In this document: one piece after another, positions 11,301 to 20,009 of the stretch | How the letters are laid out: every line of letters starts with the position of its first letter | Position numbering within the stretch: position 1 is the first letter of the stretch | Source of the DNA: Chrysemys picta bellii | Lineage: Eukaryota | Direction: 5' to 3' | Length of the DNA stretch: 64,000 nucleotides | Assembly: GCF_011386835.1 (NCBI RefSeq) | Contig: NC_088810.1 | Location: forward strand, 3,038,001-3,102,000 | Notes under the pieces: generated by a model | Told to the model about the DNA's origin: nothing | What the model saw: only the letters and a program-made list of their open reading frames with translations | Databases searched by the model: none | Made by a program: the position numbers and the translations under genes

Positions 11301-14241
11301 AGGTGTGGGGCAGGTTGTACTCGGGGGGCAGCTTGCGGTCGTTGTTGATGAGATGGTCCAGGATGGAAGGGCTGAGAATCGGCTGGAGGGAGACACGGTG
11401 CAGGGAGCGTTACAGCGTCCGACTGTCCAGAGCCGTGCGAGGTGCTCACAGGGACACACACGGAGCAGGGCTCATCCCCGCCAGCAGGGGGCGATACACA
11501 CACACTGAATCACCCCACCGTAACCCTGCCTTGGCCAATGGGGGAATCCACCCACAGCCCGTAGAGATCCCCCATTTCTAGAGAGCCAGGGAGCCAGCCA
11601 TCCCCACCCTACCACCAATCAGCCCCCATTGACCCATGTGCCACATAGACCCCCTATTGCTCCCGGCCCAGGGGAGCCTCGTCCTGAGAACTGAGCTCGT
11701 CAGGGTGGCAGGCCCAGCGGTCACAAATGGTGGAGTCATGTGGTGATGCCCCCTGGTGGCCAAAGGCAGTATTGCGCCAGGATCTCCATGCCCATTGCCA
11801 CGTGACGGGGGTGTCCCCTGGAGAAGGGGGCGGGCAGGGACCTGGGTGTCGAGGAAGATGATGCGCTCCTGGGTGATGAAGAAGTCGATGCCGCTGGTCT
11901 GGTTCCCCCCGCGCTCCTTGATCTCCTGGCTTTGGGTGCGGAACACGTAGGCCCTGGGATGGGGGGGATGGGGGGGACAGAGAAGGGTCAGTAGGGATGG
12001 AGGAAGGAGAATATGTGCCCCCTTGACCTGCTTCTTGATGCCCATCCCCCATCCGACACTCCTCAACAGCCCACCTCCCCACTGTCCCCCAATATCCCAC
12101 CTTCCCCCCAAACACTTGCCGGTGCCCCCCCCCCCAGCACCCACATCCACCCACCTACCCCCCCTCCATCCCACCCCAACTTCCCCCTTTCCCCCCATGC
12201 CCTGGTCACTCAGCATTCATGCCCATCCCCCCCATGAACGTGCCAGACCCTGTGCATGCCCCCTCCCCAGTTGCTACCCCCCCGAAACACCCACAAAGCC
12301 CCCCACCACCACCACCCCACGTACCTTTGATCTTCTTCAGGCTGGTTAGCCGACAGCAGAGACATCAGCATGGATTTGCCGGTGCCCTGTAATCCCAGCA
12401 CCCCGACCACCAGCACGTCGGTCTGGTCCAGCAGGTACTGCCAAGGAGAGAGAGCCCAGTGACTGCCGGCTCCCTGAGAACCCAGGAGTCCTGCGGAGCA
12501 GCAGTACAAGAGCAGGGACCGGCTGGCTCAGGGGGGCAGGGAATGGGGCACGGGGCCTTTCCCCTCTAGGGGGCGCCGGCTCCCATCTGGCCCCAGGGCA
12601 GGGTCTAGTTGGTTCAGCGGGGCAGGGAATGGGGCACGGGGCCTCTCTCCTCTAGGGGGCACCGGCTCTGATCTGGCCTCACTAGCAGGGCCCGGGGGGG
12701 CAGGGGGTGACTGGGAGGATCTCTGTGGGGTGGGGGGCGTCCCGGGGCCAGGTACCTCGATGGCGCTGTCACACCAGTTCATCTGATCATCCACCAGTTT
12801 GATGCTGTGCTTCATCTTCTCCGGGGCCAGCAGCTTTGCCTGGCCCACCACGGCTGGGGGAGGGACAAAGAGACGGGGCTCAGAGAGTCTGACAGCCCGG
12901 GCCAGGGGCTTCGCTATGTGATGTCCCACCCAGTGCTGCTCTAACCCACTGGCGAGAGAACCCAGGTGTCCTGGCTCCCAGCTCTTCCCACCCCAGCCTC
13001 CAAATCCATCCCCCTCCCCACCTCCAAACCCACTAGCTGCTTGGAGGCTGGCCGCCATCTGGTGGCAGGCACTGGTAACTACATGCATATTAAAGGGGAC
13101 CTGGTTCTCTTCCCACATCCCATCCCCCTGGGGCTACAACCCCCTACCCCTTCCTCCTACTCCCCCCTTCCTCCTAGCCCCGCCCCCGAAGCGGGTACTC
13201 ACGGTCCATGGTGCTGCTGGAGGCAGCGGATCCCATGCCCCGGTTCTGGATCTGGTAGACGGGTTGCGTGGGGCGCTGTCCCTCCTTCTCCCCCTTGGCG
13301 GCAGCTGTGGGGAGCTGGGCAGCCCCCTCCGCGGGGCCTTTGCCTTCCTCCCGCGACTTCATCAGCACGATGGGCTTCTCCATGGGGGACGGGGCAGTGG
13401 CGGGTGGGGCCGGAGCTGGAGCAGGGGCCAGCTTGGACTGTGGGGAGAATGAGGCTGGTAGAGACCCCACGTCCCATCCTCAAGCTGAGGACAGAACCCA
13501 GGAGTCCTGACTCCCGCCCCGCCCTGCTCTAACCACTAGACCCCACTCCCCTCCTCAAGCTGATACAGAACCCAGGAGTCCTGACCAAGGTCTGCCCAGC
13601 TCATTTACTCTTACTGGACTCACGTATCCGGCAAATGGTTAAGAAGCGGTTGTGAGACACCCTTGCTTGGCGCCTGCTCTATATAGTAGCTAATAGCCTA
13701 CTGCTGCTGCATGCTGACAGAGTAACTCCTTTAGCTTCCTGTGGAGGATACCAGCTCTACTACAGCTGCCTGCTGATGAAGCCCCTCCTTTAGCTGAAGC
13801 AGCAGAGTCCTGTGGGCTGGCACTGCGGGTGGTGGGTTCAAGACCCACTATTGGTGGGAGTCTCACACACAAGGGTGGGTGTGACAGGCCCTGGGGGGCA
13901 GCGCCCTTCCCATGTGGGTCTTACCCTCTCAGCAGGCGGCTTGGCCAGGATGATGGGCGTCTTCTGCATCACGGACCCGACCGGCTCCTCCACGGGCTCC
14001 TGGGGGAGAGATCAGAGAGGGGTGAGGGGGGTCCCCGCAAGGCCCCTCCCGCACCCCACGGCCCCTCCCCTGCCCCGTCACTCACCCGGCGCTCGCGGTC
14101 CCAGGGGCCGTAGTCACGGTCCCGGCCTGGCCCCGACAGGCTCTGGGGGCCGCCCGGGGGGCCCAGCTCCTTGTCACGGTTCCAGCGGCGCCGGCGGTCG
14201 GGGCCGTACAGGCCGGGCTGGCTGTGCCCGGAGTCCGACAT
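8400..14241 (-). CDS. SMG9: SMG9 nonsense-mediated decay factor, 13 coding exons, 511 aa
   Basis: GT-AG exons 14241-14086, 13999-13925, 13437-13203, 12853-12756, 12437-12325, 11953-11842, 11382-11287, 11016-10931, 10404-10298, 9926-9819, 9532-9407, 9151-9007 and 8478-8400 sum to 1536 nt in frame. Protein starts MSDSGHSQPGLYG, has the P-loop GLQGTGKS and ends HYAARIWDGVKKSSALSEYSRLLA*. Confidence 0.97.
8520..8900. repeat. ~70-bp minisatellite carrying a CTCF-like motif (SMG9 last intron)
   Basis: About five copies of ACAGCGCCCCCTAG (reverse complement CTAGGGGGCGCTGT). Confidence 0.85.
10010..10285. repeat. ~80-bp minisatellite carrying a CTCF-like motif
   Basis: Four copies of GCACTAGGGGGCGCTGTG at ~10016, 10095, 10176 and 10256. 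Confidence 0.9.
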
Positions 14242-14339
14242 GGCCGCCGCCTGCGGGGGGGCGAGAGTCACGTCAACCCCAGCGGTGCGGCGGAGGGACA
14301 CGGCGCAGGGGGGAGAGATGCCACATAGATGAGGCTCAA

Positions 14340-15890
14340 CACGCGGGGGCTATTTCCCCAGCAGGGGGAGGAATACCGTATGGGAGAATGTGACAACACC
14401 TGGGGATTATTTCTCCAGTGAGGTGGAGGGATACCATACCAAAGAGGCCGTTAGGGACTATTTCTCTGAACAGGTGAAGAAGGAATATATTGCAGAGGCT
14501 GCTAGGGACTATTTCCCTGGTATGGCAGATGGATACATATACGCGTGAGAACACGCTTGGGAACTATTTCCCCACACTGCGGAGGGATATCACAGAAGAG
14601 ACATGATCACTGGGGTCTATTTACTCGACAGGGTGGAAGGGCACCAGGGTTATTTAACCAGCAAGACACAGAGACACCGTGGGGAAGACAGGGACTATTT
14701 TCTCTGCACTATTTACCCTGCCTGGCAGAAGGACACGAGCACAGAAGAACGGAGGGATACTGGAGAAGTGGTGAAGCCACCAGGGACTATTTACCCAGCC
14801 CAGTGGAGGAGCAAACCACCACAGGGAACTACTTAACCTGCGTAGCAGCGGGCTGTGGGACTACTTTGCCAGCATGGTGGAGGGATACCATAGAGAAAAG
14901 CGCACAAGGGGCATGGGGGACGGGGGGCTGAGAGCCCTTGAACCAAACTACAAACCGTGGATACGATGGAAACCACGTCAAGCCGCACCTAGTCCCAGCA
15001 CCTATGGGGGACTATTTAGCCCATGTGGTGGAGGAATATGTAACCTGCTTCTTAAGGCGCTGGGGTGTTAGACCCGTGGGCGCATCAGCCCTGCGGATGG
15101 ATACGGGGCAGGAGGCTGCTGGGATACGTCCTGCTCAGTGGAGGGATTCTGGGCACCAGGGTTATGACCCCAACCACCGGGGGGGGGGCGCCACTGGGAT
15201 TATATACCCTGCGGAGGGATACAGAGAAGTGATAAAGTGTTATGGGGTTACATGGCCTGCAGAGGAGCCCCCCCCCCCCGGGTATACTGCGCACAGTCAG
15301 AGACTATATGGCCCATGGAGGAATACAGTAGAGATGTGAGGTGTCATGCTGGGAGCTATATGGACCACGGAGGGATACAGGGGTGAGACATCACCCCCAG
15401 AGGCTATACGGCCCGCGGAGGGATACGGGGCAGAGTGACACATCACCCCCAGAGGCTATATGGCCCGCGGAGGGATACGGGGCAGAGTGACACATCACCC
15501 CCAGAGGCTATACGGCCCGCGGAGGGATACGGGGCGCTATATACACTGGAAGATGGTGGAGCAGTGCGCACCCGCGGAGGGATACCGCCCTAGGTTAGGG
15601 AGCTGTAGGATCTACATGCCCTGCGCGGGTCACCGGGCTGCGGAAAGAGCCCGCAGAACGACATACCCGGCGGAGGATTAATCCCTAGGTAAAAGGAGGA
15701 CCGAACTAGCTCCCCGCGTAGGGATACCGGACTGGGTATCTCGTCCCAACCGCCCGCCCCTCGGAGGGATACCGGGAGTGTGACGCGTCACCCGGCGCTA
15801 TTTACCCCGCCCCGCGGAGCGATACCTGAGCGCTGGTGCTGAGAGCAGAAGCCGGGGCTGTCGCCCCGGTAACGGCGGAGGGATACCGGG
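14340..15890. repeat. Degenerate array of GGGNCTAT(T/A)T ... GGAGGGATAC boxes in SMG9 intron 1
   Basis: More than 20 degenerate units at ~50-60 bp spacing with divergent spacers. Three near-perfect 52-bp units start at 15389, 15441 and 15493. Confidence 0.8.
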
Positions 15891-16330
15891 CGGCTCACTG
15901 GGGCTGAGGTACCGTGCAGCGGCCGGGACGGGCTGCTGGGGAAGCCCGGCGGCGCGAACAGCGCATCTGGGCGCCGGCTTGGAACGAACCTGCTCGGCCA
16001 CCGTTGTTTCCGAACGCGCCTGCGCGCGAGGGGGGCGTGTCCAAAATGGCGGCTTCGCGCCCGCGCGGGCCGCTGGCGGCACATGCGCACTGCTCTGGCA
16101 TGGACAGAATAGACCCCTCTTAAGGGGCGTGGCCTCCTGTCAGAACGAGGCTAGAAAGGTAGAGGGGAAATACATGAGCGCGCATGCGCACGGAGCTGGG
16201 GTCTCTGCATGGCTCTGGGGGCGGGGCGGGACCGAGGGGTTGGAGCAGGGGCGGAGCCAGGACGCCTGGGTTCGATCCTGGGTCATGGTGCGGCTCGGGT
16301 CAGACCCGGCTCCCGGTGCCTCAGTTTCCC
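15760..16330. promoter_or_regulatory. CpG island / bidirectional promoter for SMG9 and the ZNF gene
   Basis: High CpG density, YY1 consensus CAAAATGGCGGC at 16042-16053, NRF1 motif GCGCATGCGCA at 16180-16190 and GC boxes. Lies between two divergent genes. Confidence 0.75.
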
Positions 16331-17334
16331 TCGCCGCTCAGCGCTGCGGGGGGGGGGGCTGGGGCTAATTAGCCCGAGACAAATCAACCCGGAACAGGGA
16401 CCCCGCCCCCGGGACCCCCCCATCTATCCCTATACACCCTCCTCGCCCCCCCCCCGCCCCATGGACCCCCCATCTATCCCTATACACCCCCCCTGCCCCC
16501 CCATGGACCCCCCCACCCACTGATCTGTCCCTGCCCCGCCCCCGTCCGTCTGCACCCACGTGTCTCTTCTCGGGCCCCTCCCCACAACCCCCCGCCCCTC
16601 CTTCCCTCTCCCCACCCCCATCCATCTCCAGCCCCCTCCCCGCACACCACCACCCCGCCCCCCAACAGAGGCACCTTCCCTGTGCCAGACAAACAGGCCA
16701 CATTGTCCCTCCTCCATGTAAAGCCCGCAGCCGGATGGGGGCGGGGAGGACTACACTTCCCAGCATCCCCCTGTGTCCCCCCCCCCCGCTGCCAGCTTCC
16801 GGGCCAGCAGGCTGGCGGGGGCGGGGCCGTAGGGAGCTGCTCCCCCTTCCACGGGGTGTTTGGGATCCAGCGAGGACCATGCACGAGCGGGTCCTGGGCT
16901 GGGTAGCTGCAGCCCAGGCAAGTACCCGCAGGTAGGCAGCCTCCCCCCGTCCCCTGCTCTACCCACTAGACCCCACTTCTCTCCCAGGTGGCCTGAAATT
17001 TACTCCCCTCCCACTCCCCGAAACTGAGGTCTCATTTCCCTGGCCTTTGCAGGACTCCTGGGTTCTCTCCCTGGCTCTGGGAGAGGGGTCGGGTCTAGGG
17101 GTTAGGGCAGGGGGGGCTGAGAGCCAGGACTCCTGGGTTCTATCCTGCACTCCACCATAAATACTTTGTGCGACCATGTGCACATCCCCGCTTGTGTGCC
17201 TCAGTTTCTCCTCTCTCCCCCCACCGGAGGCAGCAGGCCGCTCTGCGCTTGTGAAGTCCTGTCAGGGCGGTGGGGGACGCGGCGTGCTGCCACCGATCCA
17301 CTCAGTGTGTTCCCCGCTTCGCTTCCAGGCAGCC

Positions 17335-20009
17335 ATGGACCCGGCGCCGGCAATGGAGGTTGGGGGCCGAAATTGAAGTGACCGAAGATGGCGCACTGGA
17401 GGAACTGCCGCTGCGGCTGGTACGTCCCGGCGCTCGTGTCTGAGCAGCGAGTGCGCCGGCTTGGGCGGGAGATGCAGCCATCTCTGGGGTGGGGCAGAGG
17501 CTGTTTATACAGGATCCCTCACCCGGCCCTGAGATGCGGCTGCCTCTGGAGGGGAGCGTGGGGGGCTGCTTTACACTTTGAGACAGGAAGTGTATGAACC
17601 ACACATTTTAGGAGGGGTAGTTTTGGTCTGGACTCAGAACTTTACTTCACTTCCTGTTCATTTTGGAGGGACTCCATAGAGAACTTGTGGTGAGATGGGG
17701 GGATCTCCCCTGGCAGTCAGGGCTGGCCCCCGGCAGCAATAGGGGTGCTGTGCTGCAGGAGGTGGGGAACCCCCAGTCAGGGCTGGCCCCGATTCCCCAG
17801 TGTGGCAGTAGGGGACGCTGTATCACAGGGAGGGGTGTGGGGGTGCTCTCCCCTCCCACCCACTTACCCCCTTTTTATCCCCCAGGAGAACGCTAAGAAC
17901 TGCCTCTCATGGGAAGGCCTGGAAGCCTCCAGCAGCGATGACGATGGGGAGACCACCACCCCTACCTCCCTGCCCCCCTTGCGCCCACCCCGGCCCCTGG
18001 CGCCGAACCTGCTGGCTCCCCACTTCGCCACCAAATCGCTGCCTCTGGAGAACATCATTGTCCCCTTCCGCCCGGGGCCTGCCACCGCCCCAGGGACCCA
18101 AGCGTTCGGGGCCTACCAGTGTCAGGAGTGCTGCCAGGTCTTTGTGGAGGAGTGGCACTATCTCCAGCACGCCCAGGAGCACGCCCAGGAGCTGGCCCGG
18201 CGGCCCCGGCCGGCCCTGCCCCACTCCCTGCCCCGGAGGAAGCAGCGCTGCCCGGACTGCGGAAAGAGATTCTCCCACCAGTCCCACTTCACCAGGCACG
18301 TCAAGTGGCACCTCAAGCTGGAGCAGGCGGGCATCCGGGTGCAGCGGAGACGGGGGGCCCGGCCTTGCTCCCTCACCTCCTACGTCTACCAGCCGATGGG
18401 CGCCGGGAAGAACCAGGCGGGTTCTGGGGACGTCCCCTGCCCGCCGGCCAGCTGGGAGGGTTCGCCTGGCCTCAGGAAACAGCAGGGTGGGGCCCACCCC
18501 GGGAGGCGTGTGGGGCACACGAAGGGGCGTCAGATGCCCGAGGCCCGGACAGCGAGCAAGGAGCAGGGCACAGAAGGGCCCAAAGGGACCCGGCCGCGTA
18601 GACCGACTCTGGGCCGGGAGTTCAGCCTGCCTAGGCCAGTTGGCATGAGTCTTACCCAGCCAATGAACGTGGAGGACGAGGGGCGGGCGGCCATCTTCGA
18701 CAGCAAGGTTGTCATGAGTCCGCCACAGCCAATGAATGGCCAGGTTGGCGGGAGCGCACTTCAGGCGGCCATCTTGGACAGCCAAATGGGTGGGAGCACA
18801 TTTCAGGCAGCCATCTTGGATGGCCAGGTTGGTGGGAGCACTCTCAGGACACTGGTCATCAATACTGAGGAGCAGGCGGCCATCTTGGATGGCCAGATTG
18901 ATGGGAGCCCTCTCAGGACGCTGGTCATCAATTCTGAGGAGCAAGCGGCCATCTTGGAGAGCCTGGTTGCTGGGAGTCCCCCACCAGCAGCGCACCTCAA
19001 GGAGGAGGCGGCCATCTTGGCTAGCCTGGTAGGCGCCAGCCCTCTCCACTCTTTCCGGACCGTGGTGGTGGGAGCTGAGGAGCCAGCGGCCATCTTAGAA
19101 GGCCAAGTTGGCGTGAGTCCCCTCCACCCCATGCCCCTGCGGGCTGAGGAGCTCCCGCCTTCGTTGTTCCTGGAAGCCGAGCCCGGCCTCAGCACGGCGG
19201 TGGATGCGGTGACCCTCCGCCTGGTCCCGTTGCTCCCTGACCCCCAGGGGCTCGTCCCGTGGGGCAGCCAGATGGTGGGGGAACTTCCTGACGAGGCCGG
19301 AGACTCTCAGCCCACGGCTTTCCAGCTCACGGGCTACCTCCCGCCGCTCAACCAACAGTGCCGACCCCCAGGCCTGGTCAAACTTCCCCCCTCCCCGCGG
19401 GCCCCCTTGCTCCTCCACCTGGTGCCCACCCACCCTGACGAGCTGCCCCAGGTGCTGGAGCTGGAGTACGCACCAGGCGGTGGGCTGGCAGCGGAGCCCT
19501 GGCCGGGGGGCGTGGCACCAGACGCCGGGGACGACTTTATCGTGGTGGAGCTGGAGGCGGACGCCGGTGGGCGGGAGGAGGTGGTGGCCGGCCCAGCCTG
19601 GCACTGCGGGGCCTGAGAGCTCCTTGGACGCCAGCAGGCGCCGGCATTTCTGGTGCCCGGACTGCGGGGTGCGCTACGGCCGGGCGGCCCAGCTCCGCTC
19701 CCCACCGCCGGGGGGCTAGGGCGCCAGCTGTGCGGCTGCGGCCGGCCCTTCCGGGGCCTCCTCCACCTCCTGCGGCACCAGCTCTGGCAGCTGGAGGGCG
19801 CCGCCTTCCTCTGCGCCGCCTGTGGGGAGGCGCTGAAGGGTCGCTGGGCACTGGGCCGCCATGGGGGGCGGCACCCTGGCGCCCCCTGCTTCCGCTGCCC
19901 CTGTGGGGCGGGCTTCCAGCGCCTGCCTCGCTACCTCTGGCACCGGATCCGGAACCAGCCGCCTGGCCTGGGCGTCTACAGCCTGGACAGCTTCCTCACC
20001 CCGGCCTGA
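17335..20009 (+). CDS. Uncharacterised C2H2 zinc-finger protein (~735 aa after correcting homopolymer frameshifts)
   Basis: Exon 17335-17419 has Kozak GCCATGG and a GT donor at 17420; exon 17886-20009 follows a pyrimidine-rich acceptor. Canonical fingers: CQECCQVFVEEWHYLQHAQEH, CPDCGKRFSHQSHFTRHVKWH, CAACGEALKGRWALGRHGGRH. Degenerate fingers: CPDCGVRY, CGCGRPF, CPCGAGF. Frame breaks at 17362-17366, 19592-19594 and 19700-19715. Confidence 0.8.

What the first reader, a model, noticed from the sequence alone, without database searches (positions are those of the whole stretch)
14340..15890. Conserved-box, variable-spacer array in SMG9 intron 1
Seen: over ~1.5 kb, more than 20 units keep two boxes, GGGNCTAT(T/A)T and, about 8-15 nt later, GGAGGGATAC (the latter or a one-mismatch variant more than 13 times). 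The intervening sequence is almost unrelated between units, except three young 52-bp units at 15389-15540. A neutrally decaying minisatellite should erode evenly, so selective box retention suggests repeated protein- or RNA-binding sites between the promoter and first coding exon of an NMD factor. Speculation: the neighbouring ZNF could be the binder.
Basis: partly seen in the sequence, partly recalled or inferred. Interest (0 to 1): 0.7.

Follow-up and report, generated by a model that had tools for sequence, protein, structure and literature searches.

The report
Decayed minisatellite filling SMG9 intron 1
The first (untranslated) intron of the turtle SMG9 gene is almost entirely an old, single-locus tandem repeat of about 52 bases whose two short CpG-free boxes have worn away less than the rest; one box copy serves as the intron's splice donor, but nothing shows that the boxes are binding sites.

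Summary
The pattern is real. GGAGGGATAC (≤1 mismatch) occurs 19 times on one strand at 14292-15886, against about 6 expected by chance in the whole window. All recurrent 6-8-mers in the array come from the two boxes. The array has about 30 units of roughly 52 bp, single-copy by read depth in three other organisms, so it is not a dispersed repeat.

RNA contigs place it precisely. SMG9 runs on the minus strand. Intron 1 is 14251-15825, and the array fills it and extends about 100 bp into exon 1.

Read on the transcript strand, box 2 is GTATCCCTCC. The copy at 15816 is the intron-1 donor (CAG|GTATCG). The copy at 15213 supplies the pyrimidine tract of an alternative 5'UTR exon (14956-15208).

Uniform neutral decay is rejected (0/100 simulations). 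Decay of a CpG-rich ancestral unit explains much of the unevenness, but not the contiguous box 2 block. Differences between organisms are about two-fold rarer in the boxes, which is not significant (P=0.09).

The spacers are diverged but homologous. The neighbouring ZNF has only one or two fingers.

Best reading: a locally born, mostly dead minisatellite with a conserved core, like the human F7 IVS7 repeat. A binding-site function is untested.

The parts
14292..15925 (+). Degenerate tandem array, about 30 units of roughly 52 bp. Boxes are written on the + strand; the transcript carries their reverse complement.
15355..15535 (+). Young sub-block: 3.6 copies of a 52-bp unit at 91% identity. Contig depth here differs between organisms (about 1x to 6x of the flanks).
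14916..14985 (.). Fragment of a highly dispersed repeat inserted into the array. Depth is several hundred times the flanks in all three DNA runs.
   Evidence: tables 2, 7, 8
14251..15825 (-). SMG9 intron 1 (GT..AG on the minus strand)
   Evidence: joint 14249->15825 in RNA contigs
15826..16036 (-). SMG9 exon 1 (5'UTR). Its 3' roughly 100 bp are array units. The upstream end is only the end of an RNA contig.
   Evidence: records 31 and 32
14086..14250 (-). SMG9 exon 2, the first coding exon (ATG at 14241), encoding residues 1-52
   Evidence: PDB 6l54_C 'Protein SMG9', E 2.5e-13
14956..15208 (-). Alternative 5'UTR cassette exon made of array units plus the repeat fragment. It adds two short upstream ORFs.
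   Evidence: joints 14249->14955 and 15207->15825
15816..15825 (-). Box 2 copy (GGAGCGATAC) whose reverse complement is the intron-1 donor CAG|GTATCG. It is the only copy with CAG|GT.
15213..15222 (-). Box 2 copy whose reverse complement gives the pyrimidine tract of the cassette exon acceptor (GTATCCCTCCGCAG|G)
15780..15791 (.). Perfect CpG-rich palindrome GTGACGCGTCAC in the spacer of a CpG-island unit. The young units carry its CpG-decayed form GTGACACATCAC at 15435 and 15487.

Best explanation
This is a locus-specific minisatellite that arose at the exon 1 / intron 1 boundary of SMG9, just downstream of its CpG-island promoter. It expanded to about 30 units, so it now makes up essentially the whole 5'UTR intron.

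Most units are old and decaying. One 52-bp block is young and probably still changes copy number.

The decay is uneven for two reasons. First, the two boxes are CpG-free, whereas the spacer began as a CpG-rich palindrome that loses CpGs and collects indels once it lies outside the unmethylated island. Second, and this part is inferred, short gene conversions between units, weak constraint, or both keep the core alike.

On the transcribed strand box 2 reads GTATCCCTCC. One copy, next to CAG, is the working splice donor of intron 1. Another, followed by GCAG, is the acceptor tract of an alternative 5'UTR exon. The remaining copies are weak pseudo-sites.

Shown here: the anatomy, single-copy status, intron and exon positions, splice-site use, uneven decay and the CpG gradient. 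Inferred: the origin at the boundary, the causes of core retention, and the lack of a binding function.
For: Array anatomy and statistics.

Single-copy status: depth is flat across the array in DNA contigs of three other organisms, apart from an inserted repeat fragment. There is no other copy in the 64-kb window.

Stability: one contig per organism spans 14100 to about 15400 with 1-2% differences and no unit-scale indels, so the old part is stable. Contigs break, and depth changes, only at the young block.

Splicing: RNA contig joints define the intron and the cassette exon, and both sites sit on box 2 copies. Only the used donor copy has CAG|GT; the other copies match 1-5 of the 9 consensus positions.

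CpG gradient: CpG o/e is 0.3-0.6 over 14300-15500 and 0.9-1.1 over 15500-16100.

Simulation: a CpG-decay model reaches the observed column variance in 6-27 of 100 runs.

Constraint and alternatives: there is no significant depletion of between-organism differences in boxes. At 15139-15140 the window has a 2-nt change towards the box consensus where three other organisms differ, as conversion would give. No Rfam match, no hairpin signal and no coding signal were found.

Precedent: the human F7 IVS7 37-bp minisatellite spans the exon-intron boundary, and its authentic donor is followed by pseudo-sites (PMC1557585).
Against: The CpG model never reproduced the contiguous 10-column contrast between box 2 and the spacer (0/100).

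Spacer columns that are not CpG in the island units are as eroded as the CpG columns. Mutation bias alone is therefore insufficient.

Between-organism differences are about two-fold rarer in boxes (non-CpG sites 1.15% against 2.27%). Weak purifying selection would give the same result.

The choice of ancestral unit for the simulation is an assumption.

No outgroup beyond organisms about 1-2% diverged could be obtained.
Confidence: 0.55

Rival explanations
1. The boxes are a homotypic cluster of about 20 binding sites under selection. They could act in DNA for a sequence-specific factor acting on the SMG9 promoter. They could instead act in the pre-mRNA, where the transcript carries UAUCCCUCC and AAAUAG and would suit a C-rich or pyrimidine-binding splicing factor.
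For: Uniform decay is rejected, and the CpG model fails on the contiguous box 2 block. All recurrent k-mers come from the boxes. Box 1 to box 2 spacing is fixed within sub-families at 17-18 or 13 nt. There is a two-fold deficit of between-organism differences in boxes. The array is unique to this locus. A precedent for a dedicated motif cluster at one gene is ZNF410-CHD4 (bioRxiv 10.1101/2020.08.31.274324).
Against: The deficit is not significant (P=0.09), and 6 box positions do vary. Box 1 differs between sub-families (CTATTT against CTATAT/C). The ZNF410 motif is absent, and no other motif could be tested with a library. The neighbouring ZNF has one or two fingers. One non-mammalian SMG9 contig shows no box in the 187 nt upstream of exon 2.
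Confidence: 0.25
2. The core is kept alike by mechanism, not function. Box 2 acts as the pairing or initiation point for unequal exchange and short-tract gene conversion, in the manner of a classical minisatellite 'core' (established knowledge, recalled). It is therefore repeatedly homogenised while the spacers drift.
For: A young block shows that the array is still active. The 17-nt identity GGTGGAGGGATACCATA is shared by units 450 bp apart whose spacers differ. A 2-nt change towards the consensus at 15139-15140 is specific to the window's lineage. The depth differences between organisms are confined to the young block.
Against: The old part of the array has the same unit count in all organisms laid, so exchange there is rare. 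Conversion tracts would be expected to carry flanking spacer with them. No recombination data are available.
Confidence: 0.15
3. The array is a dispersed transposon or satellite that happens to lie in this intron.
For: One 70-bp piece (14916-14985) is a highly repeated element.
Against: The rest of the array has single-copy depth in three DNA runs. There are no other copies in the window, no earlier finding with similar sequence in this genome and no Rfam match.
Confidence: 0.03

Closest known systems
Human F7 intron 7 (IVS7) 37-bp VNTR minisatellite (PMC1557585)
   Same: The tandem repeat spans an exon-intron boundary. The authentic 5' splice site lies inside a repeat unit and is followed in the intron by further copies of the same sequence.
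   Different: Here the downstream copies are not identical to the used donor: they have CCG/CCC|GTATCC against CAG|GTATCG. One further copy lies upstream in the exon and is not used. The array is much longer (about 30 units), mostly decayed, and fills the whole intron. A copy also supplies a 3' splice site.
Classical minisatellites with a conserved core (established knowledge, recalled, not tested)
   Same: The unit is tens of bases long and G-rich on one strand. A short core is kept while the rest varies. Activity is confined to part of the array.
   Different: The core here is conserved within one array rather than shared among loci. No hypervariability of the old part is seen between organisms.
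ZNF410 motif clusters at CHD4 (bioRxiv 10.1101/2020.08.31.274324)
   Same: Many copies of one short motif are concentrated near the promoter of a single gene, with no counterpart nearby.
   Different: The motif is different: CATCCCATAATA is not enriched here. No binder is known, no deep conservation is shown, and the copies lie in a tandem repeat of common descent.

Membership tests
Minisatellite / VNTR | Head-to-tail units of 10-100 bp | tested here: met
   Wrap-around alignment gives about 30 units of 45-65 bp. TRF finds period 52 for the young block.
Minisatellite / VNTR | Confined to one locus, not dispersed | tested here: met
   Single-copy contig depth in three DNA runs. No other copy in the window.
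Minisatellite / VNTR | Copy number varies between individuals or close species | tested here: inconclusive
   Depth at 15358-15579 is about 1x to 6x of the flanks depending on the organism, and contigs break there. Contig depth is not a copy count. The old part has a constant unit number.
Exon-boundary minisatellite with pseudo-5' splice sites (F7 IVS7 type) | Array spans the exon-intron boundary and the authentic donor lies in a unit | tested here: met
   The joint 14249->15825 puts the donor on the box 2 copy at 15816-15825, and units continue to 15925 in exon 1.
Exon-boundary minisatellite with pseudo-5' splice sites (F7 IVS7 type) | Downstream copies identical to the authentic donor | tested here: not met
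   The used site is CAG|GTATCG (6/9 to consensus). All other copies score 1-5 of 9 and lack CAG.
Exon-boundary minisatellite with pseudo-5' splice sites (F7 IVS7 type) | Pseudo-sites stay silent | tested here: inconclusive
   Only three joints appear in one RNA run's contigs, and none comes from another box 2 donor. Contigs drop rare forms.
Homotypic transcription-factor site cluster (ZNF410-CHD4 type) | Motif copies match a known factor's motif | tested here: not met
   CATCCCATAATA with <=3 mismatches: 21 hits in the window against 24.5 expected, with one weak hit in the array. No motif library was available for other factors.
Homotypic transcription-factor site cluster (ZNF410-CHD4 type) | Motif copies conserved between species more than their surroundings | tested here: inconclusive
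   Six of 34 between-organism differences fall in boxes covering 29% of positions, P=0.09. The organisms are only 1-2% diverged.
Homotypic transcription-factor site cluster (ZNF410-CHD4 type) | Occupancy by the factor | not testable with these tools
   Needs ChIP, footprinting or pull-down.
Dispersed transposon or satellite | Many copies genome-wide | tested here: not met
   Only 14916-14985 and 16246-16300 show very high depth.
Structured RNA family | Rfam match or conserved fold | tested here: not met
   No Rfam hit in the array at E<=1. Mean fold z is -0.4 per unit on either strand. Spacer hairpins are not significant. No preferred pairing register exists around box 1.

The most novel reading that the evidence does not exclude
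The paired boxes are about 20 maintained binding sites, in DNA or in the pre-mRNA, for a dedicated factor that sets SMG9 output. In this reading the array also spawns upstream-ORF-bearing 5'UTR exons that could couple SMG9 mRNA to NMD itself. That would be a single-gene motif cluster of the ZNF410-CHD4 kind, built from a tandem repeat.
Probability: 0.1. Interest if true: 0.6.

Novelty: new member of a known kind. Interest (0 to 1): 0.3.

Why it matters
As it stands, this is a tidy example of how a tandem repeat born at an exon-intron boundary can become an entire intron and donate splice sites. The working donor and a cassette-exon acceptor both sit on repeat copies. Each differs from sister copies by a change that looks like a CpG transition (CCG to CAG, GCGG to GCAG).

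It also shows that 'conserved boxes' in a decayed repeat can largely reflect where the CpGs were. If the residual box conservation proved to be selection, the array would be a rare repeat-built regulatory cluster at an NMD factor gene. Current evidence does not require that.

Tried and rejected
- **RNA families:** an Rfam scan of 13000-17500 found nothing in the array.
- **Hairpins:** whole-unit fold z-scores, spacer-only folds and pairing registers around box 1 gave no convincing signal. A few spacers do hold palindromes.
- **Coding origin:** ORFs across the array have no Pfam match. Exact look-ups of three array ORFs found no record.
- **Orthologous introns through proteins:**
  - The exon 2 ORF search returned only exon-fragment ORFs. 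Seven look mammalian; they might be human, so I did not fetch or compare them.
  - One non-mammalian contig (L001) holds only 187 nt upstream of exon 2, with no box.
  - The antisense 193-aa ORF found nothing.
  - I did not use the large representative search, because the operators reserved it for open proteins.
- **Known motifs:** the ZNF410 motif is absent. Resemblances to CTCF, ZNF143/SBS, forkhead and GATA motifs, recalled from memory, hold in only one or a few units each and were dropped.
- **Earlier findings in this genome:** searches by sequence and by words returned nothing.

Full report
**Where it lies.** The reverse strand at 14241-14086 encodes MSDSGHSQPGLYG... This matches residues 1-50 of 'Protein SMG9' in PDB entry 6l54 chain C (E 2.5e-13). 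SMG9 therefore runs on the minus strand, and this is its first coding exon.

I laid contigs of one RNA run (X15, near-identical to the window) and three DNA runs of other organisms (X11, X13, X14) on 14100-16300. The RNA contigs carry three joints:
- 14249->15825, which skips 1575 bases. The ends are CT..AC on the + strand, i.e. GT..AG on the minus strand.
- 14249->14955.
- 15207->15825.

From these, intron 1 is 14251-15825. Exon 1 runs from 15826 to at least 16036, and a cassette 5'UTR exon lies at 14956-15208. The repeat (14292-15925) therefore starts 41 nt upstream of the exon 2 acceptor, fills the intron, and continues about 100 bp into exon 1.

**Is the pattern real?** Yes.
- GGAGGGATAC with at most one mismatch occurs 27 times in the window, against 6.15 expected (0 of 100 shuffles reach 27). 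Nineteen copies, including all 11 exact ones, lie at 14292-15886 on the + strand.
- GGGACTATTT with at most one mismatch occurs 10 times, all in the array.
- A gapped bipartite pattern matches 6 times against 0 expected.
- Without any alignment, the most recurrent 6-, 7- and 8-mers of the array all come from the two boxes. This holds after removing two of the three young copies and the inserted repeat fragment.
- TRF detects only the young block at 15355-15535 (period 52, 3.6 copies, 91% matches).
- A wrap-around profile alignment resolves about 30 units. Consensus frequency is 0.7-0.9 in box 2, 0.6-0.9 in box 1 and 0.3-0.7 elsewhere.

Three points are overstated. About 19 units have both boxes, not more than 20. 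Box 1 has two versions with two fixed spacings to box 2: CTATTT at 17-18 nt and CTATAT/C at 13 nt. The spacers are homologous, though diverged: BLAST aligns whole units from opposite ends of the array at 77%, and a GTGA..TCAC core recurs.

**Is it a dispersed element?** No. In all three DNA runs the depth across the array equals that of the flanks. There are two exceptions: 14914-14987, at hundreds of times the flank depth with many contigs running off into unrelated sequence, and 16246-16300. The first is a roughly 70-bp fragment of a dispersed repeat inserted into the array. The window holds no other copy of the array. Earlier notes on this genome hold nothing similar.

**Is the uneven decay more than neutral?** I ran the same alignment pipeline on simulated arrays of 28 units with unit-specific ages.
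- Uniform substitution and indel rates, matched to the observed mean conservation (0.63), never reached the observed heterogeneity: column variance 0.023 against a simulated maximum of 0.0185, and 10-column contrast 0.30 against 0.175 (0 of 100 for each).
- The boxes are the CpG-free part of the unit. The best-preserved unit, inside the CpG island at 15763-15815, has eight CpGs, including the perfect palindrome GTGACGCGTCAC (15780). The young units carry GTGACACATCAC, the product of two CpG transitions.
- CpG o/e is 0.3-0.6 over 14300-15500 and 0.9-1.1 over 15500-16100.
- Simulated decay of that CpG-rich unit, with CpG sites 10-30 times faster, reaches the observed variance in 6-27 of 100 runs and the top-against-bottom column contrast in 3-25 of 100. 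It never reaches the contiguous 10-column contrast (0 of 100).
- Spacer columns that are not CpG in that unit are as eroded as the CpG columns.

CpG decay therefore explains much of the pattern, but not all of it.

**Direct test of constraint.** The contigs of organisms C, D, E and A differ from the window by about 1-2%. One contig per organism spans the old part of the array with no unit-scale gain or loss. Of the 34 variable positions listed inside the array, 6 fall in box positions, which make up 29% of the array (binomial P=0.09). At non-CpG sites the rates are 1.15% in boxes and 2.27% outside.

That two-fold trend fits weak constraint and fits neutrality. Thirty-four further differences were not listed by the tool, probably mostly in the repeat fragment, so the count is incomplete. 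At 15139-15140 the window carries a 2-nt change towards the box consensus where three other organisms agree with each other. Gene conversion between units would produce such a change (inference).

**What the boxes are on the transcript.** Read on the minus strand, box 2 is GTATCCCTCC.
- The intron-1 donor is CAG|GTATCGCTCC, the copy at 15816-15825.
- The cassette-exon acceptor is GTATCCCTCCGCAG|G, the copy at 15213-15222.
- Of 26 box 2 copies, only the used donor has CAG|GT (6 of 9 consensus positions). The others score 1-5.
- Compared with sister units, both sites differ by what look like CpG transitions: CCG|GT to CAG|GT, and CCGCGG to CCGCAG. The direction is inferred, since there is no outgroup.
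- The cassette exon adds two short upstream ORFs to a 5'UTR that already has one.

**Other tests.**
- Rfam finds nothing in the array.
- Units do not fold better than shuffles: mean z is -0.4 on both strands. Spacer hairpins are not significant overall, and there is no pairing register around box 1.
- ORFs across the array have no family match.
- The neighbouring ORF at 17745-19616 has one C2H2 finger below Pfam's cutoff and a second degenerate one by eye. It is a poor candidate to read a roughly 33-bp core.
- The ZNF410 motif, taken from the paper, is not enriched.

**Comparison with known cases.** The closest described case is the 37-bp minisatellite of human F7 intron 7. Its first unit spans the exon-intron boundary, so the authentic donor is followed by pseudo-sites (PMC1557585). 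The SMG9 array shares that layout. It differs in that the downstream copies are not identical to the used donor, one unused copy lies upstream in the exon, and the array is far longer, mostly decayed, and also supplies an acceptor. I file it as a new member of the minisatellite kind, not as a binding-site cluster.

**Limits.** I could not obtain orthologous introns from distant turtles, crocodilians or birds.
- Protein-based routes returned only exon-fragment ORFs.
- Seven of these look mammalian and might be human, so I did not fetch or compare them.
- The one non-mammalian contig has only 187 nt upstream of exon 2.
- I built no joined spliced protein model and did not use the large representative search.
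- Depth from contigs is not a copy count, and one RNA run cannot exclude rare use of other box copies.

**Verdict.** The array is an ordinary kind of object, a decayed minisatellite with a conserved core, with the added feature that its units provide splice sites. A binding-site function is neither shown nor excluded.

Noticed in passing
window 14916-14985: A roughly 70-bp fragment of a very abundant dispersed repeat sits inside the array. Depth is several hundred times the flanks in three DNA runs, with many contigs continuing into unrelated sequence. The donor of the alternative exon (ACG|GTTTGT at 14956/14955) lies in it.
   Followed up: partly
window 16246-16300: A second high-depth stretch (4-5 times the flank depth, with several indel variants), with tRNA-like letters (gacgcctgggttcgatcctgggtc). 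It is probably the edge of a SINE just upstream of the SMG9 promoter.
   Followed up: no
window 16043-16053 and 16180-16189: AAAATGGCGGC (YY1-like) and GCGCATGCGC (NRF1-like) lie in the CpG island just upstream of the end of the exon 1 RNA contig at 16036. The motif names are from memory and were not tested.
   Followed up: no
window 15826-16036 (minus strand): Exon 1 holds an upstream ATG opening a 23-codon ORF (MRCSRRRASPAARPGRCTVPQPQ). The cassette exon adds two more very short upstream ORFs.
   Followed up: partly
window 15909: One RNA contig of X15 leaves the reference at 15909 with 19 unrelated letters. This could be an alternative upstream exon or start, or a chimeric contig.
   Followed up: no
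window 14390-14548 (+ strand): Three successive units stay in frame (51-54 bp) and translate to a repeated ..RDYF..(E/D)GY.. peptide on the strand opposite SMG9. There is no family match, so this is probably chance.
   Followed up: partly
window 16401-16518: A C-rich tandem repeat of 50-51 bp (2 copies, 86-88% matches) and an overlapping 21-bp repeat lie upstream of the promoter.
   Followed up: no
window 14548, 14631, 14921: All four laid runs (organisms A, C, D, E) share the same differences from the window here: an inserted G after 14548, G>T at 14631, and an inserted G after 14921. These are changes private to the window's lineage, or assembly errors.
   Followed up: no
window 17745-19616: The neighbouring ORF has only one detectable C2H2 finger and a long run of AAIL(D/E) repeats. 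It is not a many-fingered ZNF.
   Followed up: partly
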